A stretch of 64,000 nucleotides of DNA from Tubulanus polymorphus. Lineage: Eukaryota; Animalia; Nemertea. Shown here piece by piece: positions 3,393 through 40,200 of the stretch. The stretch is from positions 3,100,001 to 3,164,000 of the forward strand of contig NC_134036.1 of NCBI RefSeq assembly GCF_964204645.1, given 5' to 3'. Each line of letters begins with the position of its first letter. Position 1 is the stretch's first letter. Below the pieces are notes generated by a model, which saw only the letters and a list, made by a program, of their open reading frames with translations, was not told where the DNA came from and ran no database searches. A program made the translations under genes and the position numbers.

Positions 3393-5139
3393 AAGGACCA
3401 CGGTTGAAAATATTTTTCGATAAACTTAATGCTTTTGTCGGAATTTATTTCAATGGTAACAACCTCTTTCTCTATTTTGTCTTTACATTTGGATAAGCCA
3501 CATCTTCTCATTTGATCAATTAATTGTTTTTCAAAATCATATCTTGTCATCAGAGATTGGGTGGTGTTCTAAATTTACCCTGATAACTGCGTTATATAAG
3601 GGGTTCTGTGCGAGTCCATATTCCATAACTCTGATCTTAGTTTTGAAACGTTTCAATAATAATTTTTGAGATGACGTGCACTACGTCATCGATATATTGG
3701 GGCTAGACGGGTTGCCGGTCAATTCTATTCACTTATCGATATATTCAAATCTAGTACAACTTTGCTGATCTCTGACATCATACAATTTTGTATTATAATA
3801 TCTATGTCGACCATATTAAGCAATATTAGTTATTTTCCAAGGCTTCAATAAACTTTCAAGTTAGTTTTCCTGTTTTAATGTGTATGCCTAGTTGGTTTTC
3901 CAGACAACGATGGAAGGTTGCCTGAACGTGATTTCTCATTTTATTCAAAGGCAACGAGATAAAGTGGTCGCACGTGAATTGCGCGTGAAAGATTGGTGCT
4001 CAGCTGCTGAAAGAGGGTGGAGTAATCGTTGAAAATGAAAAGACACGTTTCTGTCGCCGTGTGATGCGTGATATTTCTAAAAGAAGACACCGCCCGCATC
4101 ATAATCAGTAAAAATGAAAATTATGAAAAATCACCAGTTTGAAGGGATTTGCTCCATGCAAACTAATTCGTTTCGGTTCCAGCCTTCGATAATTCGGTCT
4201 TTTTGCATAACAGTGATAGCTTAGATTGAATACTCGACCTCAGAAGGATGTCAGGCCAATTTAGTTCTGTAGCTAATCTAACAATAAAATAGGCCCAGAG
4301 TCATAGGACTTCGTTAAGACTTAACGACCATGGAACTGTGTAAAAACATCTTAACTAGTAACCTTGATTAGTATGATTAACTATATATGATGGATATCGT
4401 TGTGGTTATGTACAGTGACTGCTGAATGGCTCTTCATTTGATGGAATGATTTAAGACCACTTTTAGACTTCGAGTCATGATGATCTTGACAATGAAGACA
4501 ATGAACCAGGTGACAATGACACAGTTCATTAGTACTAATATATTCCGTCTCGAGTTGGTCTCCGCTAACCGAGGCGTTCAAGATGAGCATTCGATTTTAC
4601 ACTCGTTCCACTTCAGTATAGTATATGATGTTTTTAGATGTAGATTCTATTCCGAGAGATGAAAATTAAAATGATGAATTTTTACAACACACAAACGACA
4701 ACCGTCGAACGAGACTTAGTCGAAGCGATGCGCCTGAAATACCTCGATACTCCGCGCGAAATAGTCGCTTACCGGGGCAAGTCTCCCAGCACCGGCAGCT
4801 AGCTAACAGCTACATACCCGATGACAACTGAAGAAGTGAAGGGAAGATCGGATAACGCTGCGGAGAAAGAGACAATAATAAAACGCACCGATTGTTACGG
4901 GCATTACGTCGTAGTCATGGCAACTACAACAACAACTAAACTCCGCATAGAGTCACCTTTTAAAGAAAGGAAAACTAACCGTGTCTGTCTGTGTACCTTT
5001 GAGTGTGTGTACGCCAAACACGAGTGTTTGTTCTTTTTTGCGTATGATGTAGAGAGAAGAGAAGGTAGAGAGTTGGCGAGAGAGGTTGAGAGAAGTGCTG
5101 AGATTGAGAGGGAAGGGAGAGGAGAGGGAGAGGAGAGGG

Positions 5140-8100
5140 AGAGGTAGAGTATATAGGATGGCGAGAGAGGCTGCGAGGGAGAGGAGAGAGATGACAGGTA
5201 GAGTATATAGGATGGCGAGAGAGGCTGCGAGGGAGAGGAGAGAGATGACAGGTAGAGTATATAGGATGGCGAGAGAGGCTGCGAGGGAGAGGAGAGGTAG
5301 AGTATATAGGATGGCGAGAGAGGCTGCGAGGGAGAGGAGAGAGATGACAGGTAGAGTATATAGGATGGCGAGAGAGGCTGCGAGGGAGAGGAGAGAGATG
5401 ACAGGTAGAGTATATAGGATGGCGAGAGAGGCTGCGAGGGAGAGGAGAGGTAGAGTATATAGGATGGCGAGAGAGGCTGCGAGGGAGAGGAGAGAGATGA
5501 CAGGTAGAGTATATAGGATGGCGAGAGAGGCTGCGAGGGAGAGGAGAGAGATGACAGGTAGAGTATATAGGATGGCGAGAGAGGCTGCGAGGGAGAGGAG
5601 AGGTAGAGTATATAGGATGGCGAGAGAGGCTGCGAGGGAGAGGAGAGAGATGACAGGTAGAGTATATAGGATGGCGAGAGAGGCTGTGAGGGAGAGGAGA
5701 GAGATGACAGGTAGAGTATATAGGATGGCGAGAGAGGCTGCGAGGGAGAGGAGAGAGATGACAGGTAGAGTATATAGGATGGCGAGAGAGGCTGCGAGGG
5801 AGAGGAGAGGTAGAGTATATAGGATGGCGAGAGAGGCTGCGAGGGAGAGGAGAGAGATGACAGGTAGAGTACATAGGATGGCGAGAGAGGCTGCGAGGGA
5901 GAGGAGAGGTAGAGTATATAGGATGGCGAGAGAGGCTGCGAGGGAGAGGAGAGAGATGACAGGTAGAGTATATAGGATGGCGAGAGAGGCTGCGAGGGAG
6001 AGGAGAGGTAGAGTATATAGGATGGCAAGAGAGGCTGTGAGGGAGAGGAGAGGTAGAGTATATAGGATGGCGAGAGAGGCTGCGAGGGAGAGGAGAGAGA
6101 GAGGTAGGTAGAGTATATACGATGGCGAGAGAGGCTGCGAGGGAGAGGAGAGGTAGAGTATATAGGATGGCGAGAGAGGCTGCGAGGGAGAGGAGAGAGA
6201 TGACAGGTAGAGTATATATGATGGCGAGAGAGGCTGTGAGGGAGAGGAGAGAGATGACAGGTAGAGTATATAGGATGGCGAGAGAGGCTGTGAGGGAGAG
6301 GAGAGAGATGACAGGTAGAGTATATAGGATGGCGAGAGAGGCTGCGAGGGAGAGGAGAGGTAGAGTATATAGGATGGCGAGAGAGGCTGCGAGGGAGAGG
6401 AGAGAGATGACAGGTAGAGTATATAGGATGGCGAGAGAGGCTGCGAGGGAGAGGAGAGGTAGAGTATATAGGATGGCGAGAGAGGCTGCGAGGGAGAGGA
6501 GAGAGATGACAGGTAGAGTATATAGGATGGCGAGAGAGGCTGCGAGGGAGAGGAGAGAGATGACAGGTAGAGTATATAGGATGGCGAGAGAGGCTGCGAG
6601 GGAGAGGAGAGGTAGAGTATATAGGATGGCGAGAGAGGCTGCGAGGGAGAGGAGAGAGATGACAGGTAGAGTATATAGGATGGCGAGAGAGGCTGCGAGG
6701 GAGAGGAGAGAGATGACAGGTAGAGTATATAGGATGGCGAGAGAGGCTGCGAGGGAGAGGAGAGGTAGAGTATATAGGATGGCGAGAGAGGCTGTGAGGG
6801 AGAGGAGAGGTAGAGTATATAGGATGGCGAGAGAGGCTGCGAGGGAGAGGAGAGAGAGAGGTAGGTAGAGTATATACGATGGCGAGAGAGGCTGCGAGGG
6901 AGAGGAGAGGTAGAGTATATAGGATGGCGAGAGAGGCTGCGAGGGAGAGGAGAGAGATGACAGGTAGAGTATATATGATGGCGAGAGAGGCTGTGAGGGA
7001 GAGGAGAGAGATGACAGGTAGAGTATATAGGATGGCGAGAGAGGCTGTGAGGGAGAGGAGAGAGATGACAGGTAGAGTATATAGGATGGCGAGAGAGGCT
7101 GCGAGGGAGAGGAGAGGTAGAGTATATAGGATGGCGAGAGAGGCTGCGAGGGAGAGGAGAGAGATGACAGGTAGAGTATATAGGATGGCGAGAGAGGCTG
7201 CGAGGGAGAGGAGAGAGATGACAGGTAGAGTATATAGGATGGCGAGAGAGGCTGCGAGGGAGAGGAGAGGTAGAGTATATAGGATGGCGAGAGAGGCTGC
7301 GAGGGAGAGGAGAGAGATGACAGGTAGAGTATATAGGATGGCGAGAGAGGCTGTGAGGGAGAGGAGAGAGATGACAGGTAGAGTATATAGGATGGCGAGA
7401 GAGGCTGCGAGGGAGAGGAGAGAGATGACAGGTAGAGTATATAGGATGGCGAGAGAGGCTGCGAGGGAGAGGAGAGGTAGAGTATATAGGATGGCGAGAG
7501 AGGCTGCGAGGGAGAGGAGAGAGATGACAGGTAGAGTACATAGGATGGCGAGAGAGGCTGCGAGGGAGAGGAGAGGTAGAGTATATAGGATGGCGAGAGA
7601 GGCTGCGAGGGAGAGGAGAGAGATGACAGGTAGAGTATATAGGATGGCGAGAGAGGCTGCGAGGGAGAGGAGAGGTAGAGTATATAGGATGGCAAGAGAG
7701 GCTGTGAGGGAGAGGAGAGGTAGAGTATATAGGATGGCGAGAGAGGCTGCGAGGGAGAGGAGAGAGAGAGGTAGGTAGAGTATATACGATGGCGAGAGAG
7801 GCTGCGAGGGAGAGGAGAGGTAGAGTATATAGGATGGCGAGAGAGGCTGCGAGGGAGAGGAGAGAGATGACAGGTAGAGTATATATGATGGCGAGAGAGG
7901 CTGTGAGGGAGAGGAGAGAGATGACAGGTAGAGTATATAGGATGGCGAGAGAGGCTGTGAGGGAGAGGAGAGAGATGACAGGTAGAGTATATAGGATGGC
8001 GAGAGAGGCTGCGAGGGAGAGGAGAGGTAGAGTATATAGGATGGCGAGAGAGGCTGCGAGGGAGAGGAGAGAGATGACAGGTAGAGTATATAGGATGGCG

Positions 8101-9670
8101 AGAGAGGCTGCGAGGGAGAGGAGAGGTAGAGTATATAGGATGGCGAGAGAGGCTGCGAGGGAGAGGAGAGAGATGACAGGTAGAGTATATAGGATGGCGA
8201 GAGAGGCTGCGAGGGAGAGGAGAGAGATGACAGGTAGAGTATATAGGATGGCGAGAGAGGCTGCGAGGGAGAGGAGAGGTAGAGTATATAGGATGGCGAG
8301 AGAGGCTGCGAGGGAGAGGAGAGAGATGACAGGTAGAGTATATAGGATGGCGAGAGAGGCTGCGAGGGAGAGGAGAGAGATGACAGGTAGAGTATATAGG
8401 ATGGCGAGAGAGGCTGCGAGGGAGAGGAGAGGTAGAGTATATAGGATGGCGAGAGAGGCTGTGAGGGAGAGGAGAGGTAGAGTATATAGGATGGCGAGAG
8501 AGGCTGCGAGGGAGAGGAGAGAGAGAGGTAGGTAGAGTATATACGATGGCGAGAGAGGCTGCGAGGGAGAGGAGAGGTAGAGTATATAGGATGGCGAGAG
8601 AGGCTGCGAGGGAGAGGAGAGAGATGACAGGTAGAGTATATATGATGGCGAGAGAGGCTGTGAGGGAGAGGAGAGAGATGACAGGTAGAGTATATAGGAT
8701 GGCGAGAGAGGCTGTGAGGGAGAGGAGAGAGATGACAGGTAGAGTATATAGGATGGCGAGAGAGGCTGCGAGGGAGAGGAGAGGTAGAGTATATAGGATG
8801 GCGAGAGAGGCTGCGAGGGAGAGGAGAGAGATGACAGGTAGAGTATATAGGATGGCGAGAGAGGCTGCGAGGGAGAGGAGAGGTAGAGTATATAGGATGG
8901 CGAGAGAGGCTGCGAGGGAGAGGAGAGAGATGACAGGTAGAGTATATAGGATGGCGAGAGAGGCTGTGAGGGAGAGGAGAGAGATGACAGGTAGAGTACA
9001 TAGGATGGCGAGAGAGGCTGTGAGGGAGAGGAGAGGTAGAGTATATAGGATGGCGAGAGAGGCTGTGAGGGAGAGGAGAGAGATGACAGGTAGAGTATAT
9101 AGGATGGCGAGAGAGGCTGTGAGGGAGAGGAGAGAGATGACAGGTAGAATATATAGGATGGCGAGAGAGGCTGCAAGGGAGAGGAGAGGTAGAGTAAATA
9201 GGATGGCGAGAGAGGCTGTGAGGGAGAGGAGAGGTAGAGTATATAGGATGGCGAGAGAGGCTGCGAGGGAGAGGAGAGAGATGACAGGTAGAGTAAATAG
9301 GATGGCGAGAGAGGCTGCGAGGGAGAGGAGAGAGATGACAGGTAGAGTATATAGGATGGCGAGAGAGGCTGCGAGGGAGAGGAGAGAGATGACAGGTAGA
9401 GTATATAGGATGGCGAGAGAGGCTGCGAGGGAGAGGAGAGAGATGACAGGTAGAGTAAATAGGATGGCGAGAGAGGCTGCGAGGGAGAGGAGAGAGATGA
9501 CAGGTAGAGTATATAGGATGGCGAGAGAGGCTGCGAGGGAGAGGAGAGAGATGACAGGTAGAGTAAATAGGATGGCGAGAGAGGCTGTGAGGGAGAGGAG
9601 AGAGATGACAGGTAGAGTATATAGGATGGCGAGAGAGGCTGAGAGGGAGAGGAGAGGTAGAGTATATAGG
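5140..9670. repeat. Purine-rich minisatellite (45-bp and 54-bp units plus a 55-bp variant) with higher-order structure
   Basis: Core gtagagtatataggatggcgagagaggctgcgagggagaggaga[gagatgacag]. Diagnostic variants recur 1667 bp apart. Confidence 0.98.
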
Positions 9671-14435: not shown

Positions 14436-17400
14436 AAATGTCTTAGTGTAGCCCAATAATCTTGTTACATTTTCTTCCTCAGGCCCTATTCCTTCTTTAA
14501 ACATTATTTTTGACACGGCTAGATAGTCCGTGCGAGTCTCCGTGTAGACCCTATTATCTTGTTACATATACTTCCTCGCACCATTTCCCCCAATTTTTGT
14601 AATAGAATAATTTGTTAATGGAAATAAATCTAAAGACAAAGATTCAGACATGCATTTTTAGCCAGGGGTATTTTCTACAAAGTTCGTTGATTCAAAAGGC
14701 CAGCCGAGAAGTTTTTGCCCGGACTCGAATCGGGTTCTTGCGGAGGTAATCTGAATGGAAACGTCGCACAGCCCCGCCATCTTGCAGAAGTATATTCAAA
14801 GACGTTACTTATCTAAACCATAACGCAGCATGTCCTAGGGGCATTGAATTCAATTAAAAACATCCTGATCTATGGATACAGACGATGAACTGAGGCATGG
14901 AACGCCGTACAGGTGTAAAAGTGATGACACCTGTGTTGTTGTTGCTACCGGATGATAGAACAAGGTTAGCGGCAAAGAAATAGTTCTTGTCTTCCGAAGC
15001 ACTACTTCTTGCTTTCATTTGAATCGGTGAATATATATGTACCGTTTTGTTATTGTTGACTATCATAACATAACTATGCACACGTTGCTCCACAGCATAT
15101 GTCTTATCAACAATAACATATAAATGTGTTTCAGTGATTTTACGGATAAACAACCTCGCTAAGCATCCAATACCACCATCCGTATCAACATCACCACCGC
15201 CTCCTCATAGCTCATCCGTATCAACATCAACACCACCTCCTTGAAGCTCATCGCTGAGCTTTCCTCGGTTGCATTCCCACCAACAACGCAACACCAGCCA
15301 GACTCGTGTCGCATCACCACAGTCCAGTGCTTCGTCTGACCACTGGCTCCCTTCCAATCGTTGCCTAACTATCCCTTCTGCTATGTTGTCGTTTCCACCA
15401 CCAGTTATGCCTTAATTGTTATTTCCAAAAATCTCGATGTATTAGATTAGGCAGCCATTGTAGGATGATGTTATTCGCTTGTGGTTTCACAGAGGATGCT
15501 ATTTTTGGTCTAGTATCAGGCCTCACGGACCCAGATGTAATTCGCTTGTGCTTTCGGAGAGGTTCCTGTTTTTTGGTCTAGTATCAGGCCTCACGGACCC
15601 AGTATAACAGAAACATCACGTACAAATCATACATGATATAATAACAATATCAATGTTTATAAATATACATAAATAACTTCATCTTATTACTCGGATAAAT
15701 ATTTCACCTGACATAACACGTTAACAGGTAGTTGTATCATCAGGCCTTTAACAAATTGTTAGGTAGTATATAGATTTATATACTTCAATATGATCTAAAC
15801 ATGATATACGTACTTATGGTGGTAAGAAACAAGTGCACCAATTCATAGTATTTTCTCATTAGAATTACGACCGAATTCATTGAACATTTTGAGACGAAGT
15901 AATTTTGCGGTCAATATAACAAGCCTTCGAGATTTTCAGAACGGATACAGAAAGAAAGAATATGCATTATCAAAGCATTGTTACTTCATTGCAGTACCAG
16001 CCAGCTGGGCCGTGCCGGGTTTTTAGGGCAGTTGTATTTCAAGAAAAAGGGCACTTTTTCATCGTGAAAAAGTACTGACCTTAAATAAAGTGCCCGGGTA
16101 CCTGAATATATTTTAGAATGGATGACTTTTCATTTTCCAAAAAAAATTGTGAAAATTCTATCGAAATTTCGAAAAATCTTAACAAAGTTTCTTGGCACTG
16201 ACTTTTTGAAGGGCACTTAGCAAATTTAAGTGCGTCCGTTCGATATCAAAACAAGTGTGTAAGTTCTGGAGATAATCTGTTTTTACAACAACCACGTCAT
16301 TAGGGACAGAAACTAAGTTTGTACGACTAACTCACTTCATTAATACAGGATTCGAACCCACGCAATCTATCGCCTATGACGTCATTTTGGGAGAGCCGGG
16401 ATATCCCAGCCGTCCAATGTAACAATATGTCCCTGACTGTAGTGTATTTTTATTACCTGGCGATCGAATGTAAACAATCTAGCGCTAAGAAGACAGGCAC
16501 TGATCGTCCAGCTTGTTCCAGATCCTATCTAGGATCAATGTCCGAACTGCCGAATTTATGTGTTTACTGAGTGACTCCAAATATCCGAATTTGACGGAAT
16601 AATTTGGCCATAAATTTGATCAGATATATGTTCATAAATCGAGGTCACAGACACAATAATCATCGTACTACCAGCTGACACCGACGTAGAGATAACGATA
16701 TGAGTGAATTTCGACTATCAATGTTTATATGCTGACCTGTTGTTAATGTTATTAGCTAGGATAATTTCGACTTCATTTCGACTTTTGATCGGCGGTAAGT
16801 GACCCATATTTTATACTAAGTAAATTCTAGTTTTTTTTAATGAATAACCATTAATTCATTGGGTGCCATTCTTGGGATCAGCAAGATCGTCTGATTCATT
16901 CAATTTCTAAAATCTAGTCGTTACCACCAATGGAATCAGGCCAGGGTATAACCCGTAAAACCGATCCCAAACGACCCGTTGCGCAGGGGGACACGTACAC
17001 CGTCTGTTATTCAGACTGCCCGTAACATCATCTATGATTTTATTTTCAATTTAATTTCTTGCTGCATTTTGGTGTAAAACGATTCTTTGGAAAAAAAATG
17101 ACTATGAATATCCTTATCTAATCTAAGTATTGCTAACAATCGAAAAAAGTAATGCCATTTTCCCATTTCCATTGCCGCATATTCCGACTGCGCCTTCTAA
17201 ACTGTCAAGGCACCAGCTGGCGCGCTGAGCCGTTTCATTGAACTAACAACAGTAACATGCAGTAACGTGCTAATCCAAATTTAATTAGAAATGTCTCAAC
17301 ACGTATTATGCTTAATGTATGCTAGCAAATGCCAATTGTTAGTAAACGGCGAAGGACTTAAGTAACGCTTTAAAAACCGGTTCGGTATATGTGTCGCAGA

Positions 17401-17452
17401 GTTGAATTTTCTAAATATTCCAAATCCAACTTCAGCCCGCGTTATCAGCGCG

Positions 17453-20407
17453 ATGTTGTCGACGACGGCGAAGAGAAAGTTGATAATTGATACGGATGCT
17501 GGTCTGGATGATGCTCAGGCTATAATGATGGTGCTGGCGGATCCGAACGTTGAGCTGCTGGCGTTGACGACCGTAACCGGTAACGTACACGTCGATCAAG
17601 TCAACGTAAACGTTCTGCGAGTATTGAAACTGTGCAACAAATTGGACGTAAGTTTATACCGCGTAATCTTAGATTTCGTTTGAGCAGGTCGGGGGGCCAA
17701 GTATAAGTAGTCAACCCCCGATATACCGCCCACAACGATTTTGGCGGTATAGAGAGTATGGCGGTATATTGGAAGTGTTTTACTATGTATTTGTATTGAG
17801 ATGTACATTGAGAAAACTTGGAGGTAGGCGGGGGTGGCGTTAAATGGGAGGCGGTATATCGGGGTTGACTGTTGTTGAGTTGGTGAAACGTTAGGGTTAG
17901 AGTTGAGATTTCAATAGTGATGACTGCTTCATTTTTGACAGCGTTGAGATGTACAATTTGGAGTTAAAGACACATGAGTTGATCGTTGAAGTATAACCAA
18001 ATCTGTCATATTTGATGATATTTTCAATTTACAGATTCCAGTATATCAGGGCAGCTCTGATCCACTTGTAGGAGAATATGACAAGGGCGGTGCTGTTAGT
18101 TATCACGGTAAAGACGGACTGGGCGATGTCCCTAATCCAGAAGTGGTAGATATGAGTCTCATCAAGTCGGAGCCAGCCGTCTCGGCGCTTACACGTCTAG
18201 TAAACCAGTACCCAGGTAAAGAAGGATGGTCGATTTTTTATGTTCAGCTCTCTTTGCGAGGTCCATGAGGACACTGCAACGCAGTGCACTCCATGATGGT
18301 ACATGCTTCTGATCCCCTTCTTACAAACAACTCTTAAATCTACCAGAAAAAGCAACAAACCATCCAAATCTACTGAAGAATGAATCATTCTGAACCGAAG
18401 AAATCCACATGAAAAACCGATCCACTGAAGCAATTTGTTTTTCTCTTCAGGTGAGATAAGTCTGGTAGCTATAGGACCGTTAACGAATGTAGCCAAGGCG
18501 ATACGAACTGACGAGAAATTCGGCTCGAAACTGAAAGAATGTTACATAATGGGCGGAAACTATGATGGTAAAAACACAGTTATTTAGATCGTCTTTCAGT
18601 AACTGACCCCTGTACCGTGATATTTAAACACTAGTTTACATTAAGCAACCTTTCAGTAACTGACCCCTGTACCGTGGTATTTGAATACTGGTTTACATTT
18701 AACAACCTTTCAGTATCTGACCCCTGTACCGTGGTATTTGAATACTGGTTTACATTAAACAACCTTTCAGTAACTGTCCCCCGTAAACCGTGGTATTTAA
18801 ACACTGGTTTACATTTAACCTTTCAGTAACTGACCCCTGTACCGTGGTATTTAAACACTGCTTTACATTAAACAACCTTTCAGTAACTGAACCCTGTGCC
18901 GCGGTATTTGAATACTGGTTTACATTAAACAACCTTTCAGTAACTGTCCCCCGTAAACCGTGGTATTTAAACACTGGTTTACATTTAACCTTTCAGTAAC
19001 TGACCCCTGTACCGTGGTATTTGAATACTGGTTTACATTAAACAACCTTTCAGTAACTGTCCCCCGTAAACCGTGGTATTTAAACACTGGTTTACATTTA
19101 ACCTTTCACTAACTGACCCCTTTACCGTGGTATTTAAATACTGGTTTACATTAAACAACCTTTCAGTAACTGTCCCCCGTAAACCGTGGTATTTAAACAC
19201 TGGTTTACATTTAACCTTTCAGTAACTGACCACTGTACCGTGGTATTTGAATACTGGTTTACATTAAACAACCTTTCAGTAGGCCATACTAACTCCCTTA
19301 CTTACAATATATTAAATAACCTTTTCATCCGCGATGGAATGATATGACCCGAAATTTTAAACTGAGATGATATTTTCACAGGTATTGGTAACATTACGCC
19401 ATACGCCGAGTTCAACTTCTACGTCGACCCGGAAGCGGCAAATGAGACATTGACTAAACTAGGCTGTCCAATAACTATCATTACCTGGGAATTGTGTCTA
19501 AGACATCCACTTACCTGGGTAAGTTTTCTTCGAGCCAGCTCTCTACCAAATACAGCTCTCAGGTGAACAAAAATAGCGCGTTCCAAAATTCTGTCAAAAT
19601 AGTTGCCGACCTCGGAGTTTTTTAGATGGTAATTCCAGCTTCCGTTACTGGATGTTCTAATATCAAAGACCACCCATTGAAGATTGTAGGGATCCATAAA
19701 TGCTGGATATGAAAGGCAGGGATTTTCACCGAAAACCATGCATCCTTAAATATGCTTCACCGTTGCAATTGAAGGGGACGGAAGACCACAATCATGTAAT
19801 AATAAAATATCCAAGAAAGGGTTTGCCAGGATATATCTGCCTGGCTGTTTTGAACTCAATGCTTTAAAGGGATGTTGCTGTTAATGGATGGGAGGAGTTC
19901 AACAAACCACTTGACCATCAGATCACATGCAAAAACGACTGCCGTGCTTGAAAGAATCCTGTGAAGAAACGGGAGGAATGCAACAACGTACTGTCCGTTA
20001 TGGACAATGCGATCCTGTCACATGTTTCTGCAAGAGGAACTTAGTGACGCATTTATCTTATGTTACTGTTACAGGAAAGTCGTGACAATTACATCAACAA
20101 TCCCAGCAGTAAGGCGCAGTTCATCAAAATTGCCGAGACGGAAATCGTCGAAAGGCTACGAGACGAGGGGAAGACCTATATCTTTTGCGATCAATATGCA
20201 ACCGCCGCCATTTTGAATCGGTCGTTCGTTTTGGAGACGAAGCGGTGCCGGGCAACGGTGGCGCTGGAAGGTGAAAAACGCGGTATGATGGTTCCCGAAT
20301 GGACGCTTGAAACAGACGATGAACGCACAACAATTGACGTCGTTACGAAAGTCGACGTGGATATATTTTTGAAAATGTTTAACGAAATGTTAACCAGAGA
20401 TGAATAA
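17453..20407 (+). CDS. Inosine/uridine-preferring nucleoside hydrolase family protein, isoform using proximal last exon 5a (320 aa)
   Basis: Exons 17453-17647, 18035-18215, 18451-18567, 19382-19518 and 20075-20407, all GT-AG and in phase. Motifs: LIIDTDAGLDDA (DxDxxxDD), HGKDGLGD, IGPLTNVA, IMGG, AEFNFYVDPEAA, YIFCDQ. Confidence 0.92.
17708..17871. mobile_element. Tc1/mariner-like MITE in nucleoside hydrolase intron 1
   Basis: TIR agtcaaccccc gatataccgcc ... ggcggtatatcggggttgactg. Confidence 0.7.
18593..19281. repeat. ~58-61-bp intronic minisatellite, ~11.5 copies, partly alternating two variants
   Basis: Unit ctttcagtaactgacccctgtaccgtggtatttgaatactggtttacattaaacaac alternates with a ctgtcccccgtaaaccgtgg variant. 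Confidence 0.95.
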
Positions 20408-20635
20408 AATTTCATGTCTATATAGAAAAATACTTCGGCATTACTTCTTCATTTAATTAATGAAAATGGCGCGGATTTTCAAAACCTGGTCACTAACGGT
20501 TTATCTGTTCGAAGCCTTGTTCCCATCCAGAAACCAACATGGTTGACCCTTAGGAAGCTTACACAAAATTGCCGTATCTCTAACCATTCATCAACGTTTT
20601 GATGCTTTTTTTTATCGGTATTTTTGCATTTTCAG

Positions 20636-20983
20636 GAATACTACGACACTTTCATTGGCCGTCCTCATCTACTATGCAAATTTATCGCCGCCGCCGAAAA
20701 TAGATCCGTCACTGGGCAACGCAACAATAACGACCGGTACCGGTGTTCGGATCAGTTCGCCGCGGCGATTGCCATCGACGAATCGGTTGCGGAAGAATAC
20801 GAAGATTGCCGACGTTTTCCGACGGTCAGGCTCGATGGCACCTACGAAGGTATGATGGAGGCGACATTTTGTGATAGGGGAGAACACGCTTCAGAGGACA
20901 ACGAGAAAACGAACGTTCGCGTCGTGACTGTTTTAGATATGAATAAATTCAAATCGTGTTTGGAGAAAATCTGTTCTCTGTAA
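20636..20983 (+). CDS. Alternative (duplicated) last exon 5b of the nucleoside hydrolase (gives a 325-aa isoform)
   Basis: Pyrimidine tract plus ttcag acceptor at 20635, phase 0 like exon 5a. Open 115 aa collinear with 5a (FI..AE, Y...DQ, TV.L.G..GMM, VVT.(V/L)D...F). AATAAA at 21248. Confidence 0.8.
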   Translation, partial: EYYDTFIGRPHLLCKFIAAAENRSVTGQRNNNDRYRCSDQFAAAIAIDESVAEEYEDCRRFPTVRLDGTYEGMMEATFCDRGEHASEDNEKTNVRVVTVLDMNKFKSCLEKICSL

Positions 20984-21584
20984 AAATCGTAGGGCATCAA
21001 TCGGCATTCCTTAGTTAACTTTATTTCATTACATTCGATGAATTCCGTAACGAGTTTTCGTTTTATTTGACGTGAAAATTAGAATACCTATTGTGGAATT
21101 CTTTCTGATGACGGACATCGTGAAGTGCACATTTTAGGACCGGCCGATATCGTTGGCTTCATAGAGAATGTTTTTACCTGTAACAAAAGCATTTATTGTA
21201 AAAGTACATGACGTATACATTTTCATGTGTTGCAATGACCAATTTTGAATAAAACATACAGTTACATTTTACTACAATTGCTGTACAAAAATCAACAGTA
21301 TGATTGTACTATAAGCCTACCAAAACAGAAATCTTGCCATGTAATGTTATAAATGCATTTTTATTGATATAAGCGCACGCGTCTCAGAAATGAAAATCTT
21401 TTTTTATAAACCTTCGATTTATTTCACATAATTTCTATTCATTTCACACAATTTTTATTCGAGTCGGTCTGAAAACAAGGGTCTTCTTGTTCGTGTGCGG
21501 TTGTCACTGCGGACCTGGTTATTACACTACTGTGGCAATCAAGGATCCACTGGAGGCGCCTTCCTTTGAGTTCATCCAAAACTA

Positions 21585-21707: not shown

Positions 21708-23115
21708 CTATCTATCGGGCAGAAAATGAGCTACGAACTCGGTATAGCTGTAAACATCACCGCATCCGACCGATTTTTCCATCGAGATGAAGTCATCCAA
21801 GTTATGGTTACAATCTGTGGAACACAAGACAAAAAGCGGACAATTTTTTTCGGAGATATTCTCATTTAAAGCCTGAACTGCCAAACGGCGAGACCTACCG
21901 TCAGTTTTAATACACGGATATTCGGGTGGAGGCTGTTGCCATTCACCGGACGACGTTCTCATGTGCGAACGATCGGAAGCGAACTTTTCTAAATAAACTT
22001 CGGCCGGTATTACGCGGAAATATCTGAAATGACAGGTCCAAAATTTTAAGATCATCGAGGAGCTTAGAGTCACAGCCATTCTTCAATATTATCAATGTTT
22101 ACATCTTTAATTTTTTACGCATAATAAATGAGGTTCTTGAAATACACCTGTGATATTTTGTTGCTAAACGTCGATCTTCGTGCAAGAACGCTTTATCCAC
22201 ATAGGTGGCGACACTGGTAGGGAACGACAACCGAGTATCAAGGTCATACACGTGACTTCCGTCTCCGTCGGTAACGTGCAGAAATATCACGTGATAATCC
22301 TGCGAACGAAAAAGTACTGCGTGACAAGAAGAGGTATGCGCAGGCAAAAATTGAAAAAAATCGTGTGCGACACTGCACACATCTTACCCAAACTACCGGG
22401 TCTTCGGGATCATCGGATGCAATTTGTTCCCAAAGCGGAATCTGAAATTAACGAAACCAATGAAGTTTATTTTTTCCAACACTGAGAATAAGCCGTACTA
22501 CGATGGTCTACGTGAATGCGGTGTATAAACGATGATCAAGAGCAGAGGATATTGAAAAGTATTCCCCGAACTCTCGGTACTATAGAGCCCACCCTTAAAA
22601 CTAACTTTGTCACCTCTTCCGGGCAAAATCAATCAGTTCCCATAGACATACCGTTCTATTTGGATTCGATAGAACTACGGCGTAACATTTTTCCAATTCC
22701 GAAGGAATCCGTTTACGAATCGATTCGCACATTTTCCAAACGTTCTCTTCACTGAATCGAGAATAGAAATTCGTGTAGCTGTTTTACCAAGAACATTAAA
22801 CCCTAAAGATCGTTATATTGGCCATGAAACGGGCACGAGGCACGAACCGATGTAATAAAATTATATTTGTAGTTTGAGTTTGTAACGGGTAATGAGCGGC
22901 CGTAGTGAGCTGCGTTAACAAATAATTATTAATTGTCATGGTATTTAGTATAGTATCAGTAGCCCCGCTACAAACCTAGAAAACAATAACGCACAACAGT
23001 GACATCTGCAGCACGTACTAACTACTTACCAAAAACATTTCGTGTAAATGCACTCGTCTTTCGAGGCAAAGAGAATTCCTCGCGATTGAGAGTCGTTTTC
23101 TTCTGTAGCGGCCAT
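21708..23115 (-). CDS. NTAQ1: Protein N-terminal glutamine amidohydrolase (Nt-Q amidase, N-degron pathway)
   Basis: Exons 23030-23115, 22652-22751, 22388-22441, 22148-22299, 21899-22023 and 21708-21814. Motifs: [17 protein letters not shown]|[38 protein letters not shown]. Cys/His/Asp triad is present. Confidence 0.95.
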
Positions 23116-23650
23116 TTCTAATGATTCCATTGTCCGAACAATTCACCGATTAGGCCCTGTTCATCTTCCCAACACTAAATAATTCGTCACGCTTAAATCG
23201 CTAAAATGCACTGATTACTTTTGTCGAGCGGGCCACGACGGATCGGCGATGTAAATTTTACGTTAATGTCAATTCATTACGATAGATGGCAACCCGGTGC
23301 ATGAACACAGTTCAGTGTGGCGGCGGTAGCGCTCGGCTTGAGCCGCCGTTTCACAAAGCGCTGGCGACATGTCCGCCGCGGTATAAGGGCTGGCTCGCGT
23401 GTTTAAGCGGGTTTCTGACCAACTGACCGCGCCAAATCGGATCGGCGTTTTAAGCCGTAACTACGCTAATGTTGTTACGATGTCATTAATTCTTCTACGC
23501 AATAGGACGTTATTGGCAACTTTTTGTTTTTGATACCAGGAAAAAGTTGGCTTTTAATCGAAATGGGATTCGAACCCAGTTCGTGCATGGCAGATCCGTT
23601 CTAGCTTGCCGATATAGGAATTAACCTGCACACACATGCTGTCGACTACC

Positions 23651-34282: not shown

Positions 34283-37200
34283 ATGATGAATTCGGCTGGT
34301 AACCAGCTACTGGGCCCAGTTTCACGAACAAGGGTTTAGGCCAAACTCAAATTTTTGGTGTAATTGCTATTGGTTACTTCATGTTTTCGATGAGGACAAC
34401 AATTCAAACTTAACCGTTTTAGGCTTAAACTTTCTCATGAAACTGGACCCAGCCCGCAATCATCAAAATCAAACCATTCATAGTCCATCATTTCTGAAAT
34501 CGCTGTTTTTTTTTGCAGGTGATGCGAGTAAGAAAAATGGAAACGGCGATCAATATCTAGACGAAGATATAAGTTTTGGTACGTGGCGAATTTCGTTTTT
34601 TAACATTGATTCTTAGGCAGGTTTCCATTGGTCTCTATCGATTCTGAAATCTTTTCTCCCATATTTTGATTTCGAACAGAATAGGCTCTACCTATTCCGG
34701 AGAGGAATAATCTGTAAATCCGAAAGGAGCGGCTGGTTAAGAGTTTGTAATCCAGATTTGCTTATTCCTAAACCAGGATTTATTTAGGGCCTAATCAAAA
34801 CCAGTCTTAATGTCCCACATATACGCCTGAAGCTGCCCCACACATAGACCTTGAATTGCCCAATACCTACACCCGGAGCTGTTCCACGCATACACATGGA
34901 GCCACCCAATACAAACACCTGAAGCTGCCAATGATACAAATACCTGGAGCCACCCAATACAAACTGTGCTGTCCCTCACATGCACCCGGAACTATCCCAT
35001 GCAGACACCCAAAGCTGTCCCAACTGTTCCTGAGATCAAATCAGTCAAAAATTGTTTATTTTAGTTATAATCTTTTCCCTATAGGTGGCACTGATGTAAA
35101 TAATGATGATGATGACGGAGATGATGAGTACGATCCGTCTGCCGACGTCGAAGACAGCGATGACGAGGAAATCCACACGTTCGAAACGAACAAACAAGTC
35201 AAGAATTATCGCCAAAAAACTCTCGTCACCGCGACGACGACTAAAAAGAAAAACTCTCGCTCGAACAATCGTCAACGGCGACGATCACCGCGACATCAGC
35301 GACAACGACGCGCAAGTTTACGGTCGTCGGCGAAATCGGACGATTTGACGTCGACTTCGGAGGATGACGACGAGTTGGAATATTCCGGCGCCGGGGACGA
35401 CGACGATGATTCGTTATCTTCTATGACGAGCATCGATTTGGACGACTTCGCGAAGAATTCATTACTCGGTATTGTCGATGAATCGCAGATCGGTAAAACG
35501 GCGTCGTTGGAACAATTCGTTGCTTCGTGGACCCCGAAAATCGAAGCGCAAACCGGAAAACCGAAATCGCGATGTAGACAAAGAAGCCGATCGCGACGGA
35601 AAACGCCCCCGCAACAATCGCAGGAACAATCGGGATGTGTCGCCGCGATGACGACCGCGCGACGTAAATCGTTGACCGACGTCACCGAAGTTTTAGGCGA
35701 ATTATGCGGCGAATTCAGTAGCTCAGATAGTTCGGTGGTCGAAGTGGCACGAATCGACCACCAGCCGGTCAAACCGGGCAATACTAAACAGACGTTAGAA
35801 TGGACATCGAGCGGCGTAGGGGACGACGTCATTCATCGAAATATTTGGGACGATATTTCGAAATATTCGATTGCGTCGTCGACGCGATCCCGAAAGCCGC
35901 GGTCGTCGAGACGGAGTCCACGTTCGAAAAGTTTCGAGGATCATAGAGTTAAACCGGTTAGAATGGCTCCCCCTAGACGGCGGTCTTTACCGGGCGGTGC
36001 CGTAGCGTCTACGAGGAGCCGATCTAGTCCGCGGTTGATGGCTGCCGCAGCCGTCGCTACGAACGTACGTGAAAAACGGTCGAAAAAGACGATTGAATCA
36101 AAAACGCAAATCGAAAATAGAAAAGTTAAGAATTCTACGACCGAGGAGACCACTACGTCTACCCCGACGAGCGAGATTACCCTCTATAGCGACGACATAT
36201 CGAAATCTTCACTTACCGACGAAATACAACCGAAAAAGGAAAATGTCATATTGGGAGTTTTTCCTGGGTCTGCTCCTCAAGAGGAGCATTCACCTTCGAG
36301 CGAGATTTTACCGAGCGGCGGGGACAACGTGTCAAAGACTTTGCTAGCGGATGATAGCGATGATTTGCGGGTTTTTAGACCATTGATGCTTCCTGAAAAT
36401 GAGGAGGATGAGGTGGACAATGATGGGGAAATTCTGTTCCTCGACGACAAGTCAGGAGTTTTTTCGAAAAAGAAACCCGGAGACGTCGACGATTACGATG
36501 AAAGTAGTGCCACCTCGGTGGAAGTTGTTAAATTAGAAAAAGAAGGCGATGCGGTTTCGGTCGATGATTCGAACGCTTCGGATGAAGGATTAGAAAATTT
36601 GGGGAAACTGTCTTCGAAAATTTCCGCGTCGAAAAAGTTTGAGGATGAGTTTGACGGCAAGAAAACAATTTTCCTCTCAAGTGGCGATACGCGCGTTAAC
36701 CAATCACAGGGTATTAAACATTCTGGCAGCAGCCAATCGGATCATGTTACATGCGAATCCAACCAATCATCGTCTCCGAAAGATGCGGCTATTCTTCCAG
36801 CTGTACAATCGCAGGATATGATTGGCCGGAATGATGACAAGTCTAGCCAATCATCACCTCAGTTGGAATCTAAATCTCAATCACGGCACGCGAATGAAAT
36901 TCAGGATGGAACGTCTGACCAATTACAGTGCTCAATTGACAGTTCTGACCAATCGCAGAAGAAGGATCCAATATCAGACCAATCACAACGCACAAATGAA
37001 TCTGAGAAATCGCTGAATGAAACATTTGACCAATCACTGTGCTCAATTGACAAATCTGACCAATCATTGACCTCCAACCATAAAACTGACCAATCAGAAA
37101 GTTTGGACATTGAAACCAGCCAAACAGAGGAATCTATTCATAAATCTAATCAATTGCAGCAAAGTGTGGTCTGTGAATCTGGTCAATCGCAGAAACCGGT

Positions 37201-40200
37201 GAAAAAATTTAACCAATCAGAGCAGAGTTCGTTCTGCCAGTCTGACCAATCGCATGAAACAGTGGATATATCCAACCAATCGCCACACCGTTCTGAGAAT
37301 AGTCCCAACCAATCAGAAGATGAATTCGTGAGTTTGAAACGAATGCACGATAAGAGCACGGCGATTTATCATGTTTTGTCCGGGTCGAATAACACTGATA
37401 AGAGATTACCTCGTGAAGATTCACCAGGTGAGTTATTAATATAAAATCCGAGAATGAAAAATTGTAATGTACAGAGTAGATATGCGGCCATTCGGGTAAA
37501 CTTTTAAACTCAGTAGAATTGAGAAACAATGTGTCTTAACCTAACAGTAAGCTGTTAACTGTCTAGCCTAACAGTAAAATTTAAATCAGTAACTGTGGTC
37601 CATAGTTTTTAAAACCCATCCTCTATGTTACTAATGGTGATGTTTATCGGGCTTTTTTCCTATTTTCAGATTATCGCAGTTTTATTACGGGTCTCCAATT
37701 TTGTCCTCCTTCAATCATCAAATCATCACCGCCTCACCTGCCAGAGACAGCTGAATCGAAACGTCAACGACAGAAATCCAGACTAGGTTTGTGTTACTGT
37801 ACATATAGGCCTATTGTATATAACTGTAACATAGATGCTCGAACACTGTTCAGAGAATTGAACTGATAATCACTGAGCTTACACTTATTGGATAGACGTA
37901 ACTACAGTAGAACCTGCGTATCAGATCGAAATCGAATATAATATTTTATTGATAATAAGCAAAACTGATAGTTGATGACTTAACAGTTTATTCTGACAGT
38001 TTCAACTAGAATTCAGCATCGGAGAAATAAAAATAACACAATAACATTATTCATGTTTATCATGTGATTTTGGGTTCTCTGATGATGAAGCTAAGTCAAA
38101 ACTTCGTAGAAACTGTCAGAAAATAAATTGTTAAATCTTCAACTGTGGAGTTTGTTCATCAACTCGGAAATACTGAGATTGATATCAGTCTCTACGGGTC
38201 ATTGTATTTCACATCCGCAGTAACCTATTCCTCATAACACTGAACCGATTTATTTTTAGACGAATTACGCCGGAAACTGGAAGAATTAAACGACGATGAT
38301 AAGAGTTTATCAACTGCATCGACGCAGACAATTAGCTGTAACCGTCCGTATGTTTGTCCGGTAAGTGTGCGGAGAGCTGACACTGTGACAGTCACTGTCC
38401 CAATCTCAATGAATATCAAATCCCTGTCATCCCCTGTATCAACTAGTGAAGTGGTATGTTTTTCAAACCCTTCACTCCTACTTTCTACGCCTGCAATCAG
38501 TCACATTAACTCTTTCTCCTTTGTAGTGATCACTTATTGAGTCCTGTATTGTGTTTGTTCAGGGTGGCCACTTTCCTGGAAATCAGGGAAAAGTCAGGAA
38601 ATGTTTTTTTTTCCTTATAAAATTCAGGGAATTTTGTAGAAAAGATCTCAGGGAAATTTGTTAAGGTTGCTTGTCATACCTAAAATCAAACAGTTTGCCT
38701 CTTTGCCATATATGACTGTGTTAATTGATGGATTCTTAACAGATCATGTCAGAGAAAACAACGTATACATGTCAGGGAACAGTTGGGGATAAAGCAAGTC
38801 TAATAGAAATTGTATTCACAGTCCAATAATTGTGAAGGACAAACTTCTGAGATACTTTATTTATATCGGAACATTTCAATTCATGTCACGTGCTGCCATC
38901 TTTCTATTTTCGTCGAAACTACTTACCTTTCTCGCTGGTATGATTCTCTGTTAGAGCTACTAAGTATGTCCTGATGAACTATTTAAATTCAAATTTCTCT
39001 TACGATTATCCCCATGGATCTTGACCGGAACAAACTTTTCCATTAATTCACTGAAATATTTGTTTAATTTGCATACATGTTCAACACCGAATTTATAGCT
39101 TGGTCGAGTTGAATACTTAAACATTTGAATAATTGTGGGGAAAGAGAAGAACCTACGAAAAGAAACTCAATTATTTGGCAATCCAAACCTATTTCCCTTT
39201 GAAATACAAGTTGGATTATCCAGCACATGCAGATGGCATCTCTGAAATTGATCTAACCTGTCAGCTTACTATGATGAATGCTGAGAATTAATATAGTGTT
39301 ATGAGATGGTTATCACATGTTTTGGTCATGCACTATGTCCTTTCACATATTTTGGTCATGCACTATGTCCTTTCCGCTGGTTCAAATGATTTATCAAGAG
39401 ATAGGCCTATATGATATATGAGAATATAGATGATAGATAAGAGAAGTCTCTACAGTGAGAATATCTAATCTGTAGCCTCATATTTCAGAACAAAACGCAT
39501 TATTTTTCCTTTCCTACTTATTTGATGATGAAAGTATCTGAATAATTAGTGATTGATTTATAGAAATAATGAATCGGAATTTTTGGAAGCAGGATTTTAA
39601 AGGGGTATCTGGGCTGTATCTGCCACTGCTGCACTACACCGCACTGACCTGACCGCAACACATTTGACTGTACCACATTCAACAACTTCAGCATTTTCAT
39701 GTATTTAAGATATGCGGTTACGATTTCTGGACGCTGAGCGAGCAGCAAACTCACATGAGCGGTCATCGTCAGGACGCGGTCAGTCTGCACGTCAACCTGT
39801 GTCTAGAGGCTATGATCGAACGTAGACGACTCGGTTTAGTCGTCAACATGCCCAATTTCGCGCACCGGTGCCCGTCGTGCGAGGCTGATTTCTCCGGAAG
39901 AGACGCACTCGGACATCATGCAAGATTTTTCGATAATTACACGCAGCAGTACGCGTTTCACAGTCACGTCTACACCGATCCATCGTGCGTCGATGATAAT
40001 CTCAACGAGCTCATCTCACAAACAGGTAATAGAATCAAAGCTGATCGTTGAGCATGGTCGCATTGTGCGCAGGGTCCCCAGGTCAAAAAACTAAAGCAGT
40101 TTAGATTAAATAAAACTATTTGTTTTTGATTGGGTCTTATTTATTATGATGTTTCCTCGATGAAAATGGCTAGAAATTTTATTTCTAAATTCCGACCACC

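What the first reader, a model, noticed from the sequence alone, without database searches (positions are those of the whole stretch)
20075..20983. Nucleoside hydrolase with two duplicated, mutually exclusive last exons that swap the specificity half of the active site
Seen in sequence: after shared exon 4 (ends ...HPLTW, phase 0) there are two phase-0 acceptors (20074, 20635). Each is followed by an intact ORF (110 and 115 aa) with its own stop and AATAAA (20403, overlapping the 5a stop; 21248). The two align end to end at only ~30% identity by eye (YIFCDQYATA vs YRCSDQFAAA; TVALEGEKRGMM vs TVRLDGTYEGMM; DVVTKVDVDIF vs RVVTVLDMNKF). No second copy of exons 1-4 exists. Established: in nucleoside hydrolases this C-terminal Asp binds the catalytic Ca2+/ribose, and the preceding residue and loop II track base specificity (His in IU/CU-NH, Trp in IAG-NH, Cys in a metazoan-type group). 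Inference: one N-terminal DxDxxxDD module is joined to either a Cys-type or an unusual Ser-type C-terminal module. That would make two enzymes of different specificity from one gene through alternative splicing/polyadenylation. Deep divergence without frameshift or stop suggests both exons are under selection.
Basis: partly seen in the sequence, partly recalled or inferred. Interest (0 to 1): 0.85.

Follow-up and report, generated by a model that had tools for sequence, protein, structure and literature searches.

The report
Nucleoside hydrolase with swappable catalytic tail
A ribbon-worm gene for a nucleoside-cleaving enzyme ends in either of two duplicated last exons that carry different active-site residues, and the same two-ending design is kept in annelids, molluscs and another ribbon worm, so one gene has probably made two versions of the enzyme for over 500 million years.

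Summary
Confirmed, and broader than reported. The gene is Tubulanus polymorphus LOC141914321, a group-III-like nucleoside hydrolase (NH). Shared exons end in a phase-0 donor (19518), followed by two intact last exons (20075-20407; 20636-20983; ~30% identical, synonymous sites near saturation). RefSeq annotates both isoforms. An RNA-like run shows the join to 5a; the join to 5b was not seen, though a contig covers most of 5b. Both isoforms model as complete NH folds. New: the same switch, at the same junction, exists in Lineus, Owenia, Patella and venerid/myid clams. Proximal exons (Ala/Val-Asp-Gln) and distal exons (Pro-Cys/Ala/Ser-Asp-Glu) sort by position across phyla; independent duplications are rejected (AU p=1e-7). 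The Tubulanus pair looks like a later re-duplication of the proximal type; Octopus and Mytilus also re-duplicated; Haliotis has two tandem genes instead. The swapped part supplies the substrate helix, the residue matching catalytic Cys253 of C. elegans NH (Cys or Ser here) and the Ca2+ Asp. Different specificity is inferred, not shown. The mechanism is of a known kind; no paper on it in NHs was found. The scan noted similar tails in other genes of this genome.

The parts
16746..16794 (+). Upstream coding exon (16 codons + 1 nt); with the start of the next exon it gives a basic N-terminal extension without acidic residues, mitochondrial-presequence-like (untested)
   Evidence: Matches the N-terminus of RefSeq P0001/P0071; GTAAGT donor
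17436..17647 (+). Shared exon 1 (second ATG at 17453); DxDxxxDD Ca2+/ribose motif, Asn66 at the position of C. elegans Cys42
18035..18215 (+). Shared exon 2; beta3-alpha3 loop with Tyr110-His111
18451..18567 (+). Shared exon 3
   Evidence: exon 3-4 join seen as the loose end of the run X2 contig
18593..19281 (.). 57-bp minisatellite in intron 3 (12 copies); not part of the switch
19382..19518 (+). Shared exon 4; AEFN motif; ends on Trp232 with the phase-0 donor used by both last exons
20075..20407 (+). Proximal last exon 5a (110 aa; Glu253, Cys270-Asp271-Gln272); AATAAA at 20403 overlaps its stop
   Evidence: spliced contig, depth 493, ends at 20413; RefSeq XP_074661696.1, isoform X2
20636..20983 (+). 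Distal last exon 5b (115 aa; Glu253, Ser270-Asp271-Gln272)
   Evidence: RefSeq isoform X1; contig over 20697-21700+, junction not seen
20984..21270 (+). Probable 3' UTR of the 5b isoform with AATAAA at 21248; overlaps the 3' region of the convergent NTAQ1-like gene; end position inferred

Best explanation
One promoter and shared exons make the N-terminal two thirds of a nucleoside hydrolase. The exon-4 donor is spliced to 5a, with cleavage just after its stop, or skips 5a and is spliced to 5b, with cleavage near 21270 (alternative last exons coupled to polyadenylation). Each product is a complete enzyme fold. The swapped third holds the long substrate-binding helix, the residue that activates the leaving group (Cys or Ser), the third Ca2+ Asp, the beta-hairpin and the last core strand, so the isoforms most likely differ in nucleoside preference or turnover. 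The design arose once by tandem duplication of the ancestral last exon before annelids, molluscs and nemerteans split, and the exon has been lost and re-duplicated since; the Tubulanus pair is probably such a re-duplication of the proximal type. Shown: anatomy, 5a splicing, conservation of design, folds. Inferred: 5b use at a useful level, different kinetics, history of the Tubulanus pair.
For: RefSeq lists both isoforms, identical to the model. Spliced 3-4-5a contig in run X2 ending 5 nt after the 20403 signal. A second X2 contig covers 20697 onward; the last minus-strand AATAAA is at 21020, so antisense NTAQ1 UTR explains coverage of 5b poorly (inference). 5a/5b codon identity 46/53/31% at positions 1/2/3, four-fold sites 6 of 16; a neutral ORF of this length survives 0.5 substitutions per site in 0.65% of simulations. 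AlphaFold pLDDT 91-92 for both; TM 0.8-0.9 to solved NHs. Same donor and two tandem phase-0 last exons in the genomes of Lineus, Mercenaria, Owenia, Patella vulgata and Octopus vulgaris; isoform pairs also in Ruditapes, Mya, P. caerulea, O. sinensis. Leave-one-lineage-out profiles assign 14 of 14 exons to the right type; distal exons form a clade, 98/95; independent duplications rejected, AU p=1.3e-7. Role of the helix and of the residue before the Asp: PMC8910321.
Against: No 4->5b junction in the four runs laid (contigs only). 5b is the most diverged last exon in the set: 9 of 16 highly conserved columns kept, lowest of all full-length rows (5a 10), with the TRG..VDW motif eroded. The position before the Asp is labile even within the distal type (9 Cys, 8 Ala, 1 Ser), so Cys versus non-Cys is not a strict rule. 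Placement of the two Tubulanus exons is unresolved (5a in distal clade p=0.28, 5b p=0.07, sister pair p=0.62). No enzyme data.
Confidence: 0.7

Rival explanations
1. Both isoforms are made, but the 5b product is a weak or inactive enzyme that acts as a nucleoside-binding or regulatory subunit, for example in mixed tetramers with the 5a product; the swap changes activity or assembly rather than specificity.
For: Loss of the Cys that activates the leaving group in C. elegans NH (PMC8910321); 5b lost several residues of the conserved hairpin; NHs of groups I and III are tetramers.
Against: All Ca2+/ribose ligands are kept, including Asp271. Non-Cys last exons are the only ones found in the Lingula and Mytilus genes, which suggests that such forms work on their own.
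Confidence: 0.12
2. The two isoforms have the same chemistry; the second exon is kept for regulation (different 3' UTR, tissue, stability or location), and the sequence differences are drift under structural constraint.
For: Octopus carries a younger pair (about 70% identical) with Cys in both; 5a has almost no 3' UTR, 5b about 290 nt.
Against: In the ancient pair the type-specific residues lie in the substrate helix and catalytic loop and are kept across phyla (distal Arg, Trp, Pro, Glu in 16-18, 14 for Trp, of 18; proximal Gln in 11 of 13, no Cys in 13).
Confidence: 0.12
3. In Tubulanus 5b is a little-used, decaying duplicate; RNA over it comes from the convergent NTAQ1 3' UTR and the RefSeq isoform rests on few reads.
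For: No junction seen; the contig over 5b runs on towards NTAQ1; Mytilus shows that a duplicate of this exon can decay; 5b is the most eroded exon.
Against: Intact frame, acceptor, stop and Asp271 despite near-saturated synonymous sites; position-3-biased divergence; exon-like GC3 0.55 against 0.34-0.42 GC around it; no variant in its coding sequence in run X1 (weak, the neighbouring intron is also nearly invariant).
Confidence: 0.06

Closest known systems
Group III nucleoside hydrolases (C. elegans NH, PDB 5MJ7; PF01156)
   Same: Fold, DxDxxxDD motif, C-terminal Ca2+ Asp, and Cys before that Asp in the 5a isoform.
   Different: Asn, not Cys, at the Cys42 position; 5b has Ser for Cys253; an alpha-helix Glu253 and a Gln after the Asp that outgroup NHs in my set lack; two alternative C-termini from one gene.
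Tandem exon duplication-derived substitutions (236 human events, 77 C-terminal; PMC9741552)
   Same: Homologous alternative 3' exons, ancient, kept under selection; C-terminal swaps are the enriched class.
   Different: Those regions tend to avoid ligand-binding sites and are rich in tails, coils and membrane helices; here a third of a globular enzyme with catalytic residues is swapped, in Lophotrochozoa.
Anopheles gambiae GMC-beta4 oxidoreductase (PMC1891103)
   Same: A shared cofactor-binding front exon joined to duplicated C-terminal exons that hold the substrate-binding region. Mosquito delta-class GSTs with alternative 3' exons are a similar case (own knowledge, not checked here).
   Different: Reported for one mosquito gene; the NH switch is shared between three phyla and turns over repeatedly.

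Membership tests
IU-NH nucleoside hydrolase family (PF01156) | Pfam match over the full model and NH fold, both isoforms | tested here: met
   277 and 261 bits, model 1-296/297; Foldseek E 1e-24 to 1e-29 to solved NHs
IU-NH nucleoside hydrolase family (PF01156) | DxDxxxDD and the downstream Ca2+ Asp | tested here: met
   D35, D37, D41, D42 and D271 present in both isoforms
IU-NH nucleoside hydrolase family (PF01156) | Hydrolysis of nucleosides | not testable with these tools
   No assay
Group III NH, isoform 5a | Cys directly before the last Ca2+ Asp | tested here: met
   C270 aligns with the Cys of YCDE in 5MJ7
Group III NH, isoform 5b | Cys directly before the last Ca2+ Asp | tested here: not met
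   S270; by descent it belongs with group III-like animal NHs, by this residue it does not
Group III NH, both isoforms | Second active-site Cys (C. elegans Cys42; 'usually' present, PMC10526354) | tested here: not met
   Asn66, as in 90% or more of the animal homologues aligned
Group I / group II NH | His (group I) or Trp (group II) before the last Asp | tested here: not met
   Cys or Ser
Tandem-duplicated alternative last exons | Homologous adjacent exons, same phase, each with acceptor, stop and polyadenylation signal | tested here: met
Tandem-duplicated alternative last exons | Both exons spliced to the shared donor in RNA | tested here: inconclusive
   5a junction seen, 5b junction not seen in contigs; both annotated by RefSeq, whose read support I could not inspect
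Ancient lophotrochozoan proximal/distal exon pair | One exon of each type, proximal then distal | tested here: inconclusive
   Both Tubulanus exons carry the proximal-type Gln272 and lack the distal Arg/Trp/Pro/Glu signature, but trees do not exclude 5a or 5b from the distal clade

The most novel reading that the evidence does not exclude
Lophotrochozoans have kept, since before the split of their phyla, a splice switch between two chemically different nucleoside hydrolases, one with the group III Cys and one without a general acid at that position. The Cys-less form would be an undescribed NH class that prefers substrates needing no protonation of the leaving group, such as nicotinamide riboside or methylated, cationic nucleosides, possibly helped by the clade-specific Glu253. 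Tubulanus would have rebuilt the Cys/non-Cys pair a second time after losing the distal exon.
Probability: 0.25. Interest if true: 0.8.

Novelty: new variant of a known kind. Interest (0 to 1): 0.6.

Why it matters
Animal nucleoside hydrolases have no known physiological role and one characterised group III member (PMC8910321). This gene gives natural pairs of enzymes with an identical N-terminal two thirds and a swapped substrate helix and catalytic loop, repeated in several phyla, so the role of the Cys and the determinants of specificity can be tested directly. It is also a clear case of an ancient alternative-last-exon switch in an enzyme core, with later loss, re-duplication and, in Haliotis, an apparent hand-over to two tandem genes. 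The splicing mechanism itself is ordinary.

Tried and rejected
The search for homologous proteins with exon 5a alone gave nothing (length limit) and with the 5b region only the RefSeq protein itself: 5b has no close relative on record, so dN/dS against a near species could not be computed. The look-up of encoding contigs had no record for P0001, P0081, P0075. The primary C. elegans NH paper could not be opened; its content is cited through two reviews, and the residue numbers Cys253/Cys42 are from my own memory of it. Four literature searches found no report of alternative exons in NH genes; the library lacks most subscription journals. Rejected: 5b as the tail of a second, truncated gene (no second front in window or genome); assembly artefact or haplotype duplication (one DNA contig spans the stretch; exons only ~30% alike); independent duplication in every lineage; a strict Cys/Ser dichotomy. 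Callorhinchus P0091/P0119 share a front but diverge from exon 4 on at about 80% identity, a different pattern. A second last exon was not found within the flanks in Lingula, Liolophura, or either Haliotis gene.

Full report
Observation. The gene model was rebuilt from the sequence. Exons at 17453-17647, 18035-18215, 18451-18567 and 19382-19518 have GT/AG ends and keep one frame; exon 4 ends on Trp in phase 0. Two AG acceptors (ending 20074 and 20635) open frames of 110 and 115 aa, each with its own stop, and AATAAA lies at 20403 and 21248. The two share 34 identities in 117 columns; the local score is 117 against 26.8 +/- 4.9 for shuffles. All six exons hit PF01156 in order, 5a and 5b on the same part of the model. 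The window has no second front. The genome (268 Mb) has one other full NH gene, on C4, with the same introns and one last exon, and two identical deleted relics. The last-exon boundary is therefore older than the duplication.

Method note. The exon search returned the public protein P0001, and later searches used that id and P0071. The joined models were built only inside scripts, to compare with these.

Identity and expression. P0001 is RefSeq XP_074661696.1, LOC141914321 isoform X2 of Tubulanus polymorphus; P0071 is isoform X1. They equal the 5a and 5b models exactly once an upstream exon at 16746-16794 is added. So both isoforms are in an automatic public annotation; I could not see its read support. 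Among public runs, X2 behaves as RNA: one contig (depth 493) joins exon 3, exon 4 and 5a and ends at 20413. No 4->5b joint was seen. A second X2 contig (depth 108) starts 61 nt inside 5b and runs beyond 21700; its remaining length roughly fits the spliced convergent NTAQ1-like mRNA (inference). The last minus-strand AATAAA is at 21020, so coverage of 20697-21000 is better explained by 5b transcripts whose UTR overlaps the neighbour's than by antisense UTR alone. Contigs show presence only, so the level of 5b is unknown.

Selection. Between 5a and 5b, identity is 46, 53 and 31% at codon positions 1, 2 and 3, and 6 of 16 at four-fold sites of identical residues. A neutral frame of this length survives 0.5 substitutions per site in 0.65% of simulations without indels and in none with them. 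GC3 is 0.55 in both exons against 0.34-0.42 GC in flanking non-coding DNA. Both exons were thus constrained for most of their history. Both are fast-evolving: of 16 columns conserved in 70% or more of the family, 5a keeps 10 and 5b 9, the lowest of the full-length rows.

Structure. With an 81-sequence alignment both isoforms fold with pLDDT 91-92 and pTM 0.89 and match solved NHs at TM 0.8-0.9, including C. elegans 5MJ7. The last exon codes for the long helix 244-262, the loop and helix carrying Asp271, the hairpin, the last core strand and the C-terminal helix. In characterised NHs that helix sets purine against pyrimidine use (two Tyr put into E. coli RihB raise inosine kcat/KM 50-fold) and the residue before the Asp activates the leaving group: His, Trp or, in group III, Cys (PMC8910321). 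That residue is Cys270 in 5a and Ser270 in 5b. The other wall of the base pocket (Tyr110-His111) and the ribose ligands are shared, so 'specificity half' is about right for one wall only.

Conservation. Among the homologues, isoform pairs with an identical front and a switch right after the same Trp occur in Lineus longissimus, Mercenaria, Ruditapes, Mya, Patella vulgata, P. caerulea, Owenia fusiformis and Octopus. Genomic DNA shows one donor and two tandem phase-0 last exons in Lineus, Mercenaria, Owenia, P. vulgata and Octopus vulgaris. In the first four the proximal exon reads Ala/Val-Asp-Gln (Glu in Owenia) and the distal exon has an invariant early Arg, a Trp and Pro-Cys/Ala/Ser-Asp-Glu; the order in Ruditapes, Mya and P. 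caerulea was assigned by homology, not read from DNA. Profiles built without the tested lineage assign 14 of 14 exons to the right type. In a 31-row tree the distal exons of nemertean, annelid, gastropod and bivalves form a clade at 98/95 and most proximal exons one at 95/86. A 78-row tree recovered the distal group at 95/87 but placed the Patella proximal exons inside it and left the proximal type scattered. Forcing each lineage's pair together is rejected (AU p=1.3e-7); single-pair constraints were borderline (p about 0.05). One duplication before these phyla split is the best reading; that split is Cambrian or older (general knowledge). The front part of the Tubulanus gene groups, with modest support, with these genes and not with the C4 paralogue, and both its last exons carry Glu253, found only in this clade in my set.

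Turnover. Lingula has only a proximal-type exon, Mytilus an intact one plus a decayed copy, Octopus a younger pair about 70% alike with Cys in both, and Haliotis two tandem genes ending in a non-Cys and a Cys exon. Both Tubulanus exons have Gln272, seen only in proximal-type exons, and lack the distal signature; they pair at 96/76 in the small tree. This favours loss of the distal exon and re-duplication of the proximal one, with Cys now in the upstream copy. It is not proven: trees with 5a or 5b in the distal clade are not rejected (p=0.28, 0.07).

Mechanism and odds. Most likely (0.70): alternative last exons coupled to polyadenylation give two NH isoforms with different substrate preference or turnover. 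Rivals: 5b as weak or regulatory subunit (0.12); same chemistry, different regulation (0.12); 5b decaying in this species (0.06). A testable guess for the Cys-less forms is a substrate whose base leaves without protonation, such as nicotinamide riboside; this is inference from general NH chemistry only.

Known and new. Tandem duplicated exon substitutions are a known class, often ancient and enriched at C-termini, but they tend to avoid ligand sites (PMC9741552). A shared front with duplicated substrate-binding tails is described for Anopheles GMC-beta4 (PMC1891103). No paper on such exons in NHs was found. Earlier notes of this scan describe similar duplicated tails in an esterase, an ABHD14-like hydrolase and an ALDH1 gene of this genome (not checked by me), which suggests the design is not rare here. 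Verdict: a real feature, a new variant of a known kind; its worth lies in the cross-phylum conservation and in the natural enzyme pairs it offers. Interest 0.6.

Noticed in passing
window 16746-16794 and 17436-17452: Upstream coding exon gives a 22-aa N-terminal extension rich in Arg, Ser, Leu, Ile with no acidic residue, like a mitochondrial presequence; orthologues in Lineus, Lingula, Haliotis, Liolophura and Mytilus also have basic extensions, so there may be a second choice (mitochondrial or cytosolic) at the 5' end.
   Followed up: partly
window ~21710-23130, minus strand: NTAQ1/WDYHV1-like N-terminal glutamine amidase gene (PF09764), tail to tail with the NH gene; the 3' regions appear to overlap in RNA contigs.
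   Followed up: partly
L011 (G000:C2:~18104900-18114400) and L012 (G000:C3:~16100400-16109900): A segment of at least 9.5 kb is 99.9% identical on two chromosomes and holds an internally deleted NH relic (start of exon 1 fused to the end of a last exon); recent segmental duplication or assembly duplication.
   Followed up: partly
L010 2577-4927 (G000:C4): Second full NH paralogue with the same four introns and one Cys-type last exon; belongs to a separate lophotrochozoan paralogue group. Its second intron has a GC donor.
   Followed up: yes
L021 25657-25854 (Mytilus californianus): Decayed copy of the proximal-type last exon 1.3 kb downstream of the intact one.
   Followed up: partly
L020 (Haliotis asinina): Two tandem whole NH genes, the upstream one ending in a non-Cys exon and the downstream one in a Cys exon, the same order as the alternative exons elsewhere; the upstream exon looks mixed in type.
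   Followed up: partly
window 20271: G>A variant in runs X1 and X3 changes conserved Gly298 of 5a to Asp.
   Followed up: no
window 5124-9670: 4.5-kb purine-rich satellite (54/45-bp units) that gives long open frames on both strands; probably non-coding.
   Followed up: no
window 34856-51823, plus strand: Very large exons (862, 2536, 940 codons) of an acidic, low-complexity protein with a 99-bp coding repeat (42158-43328) and C2H2 zinc fingers.
   Followed up: no
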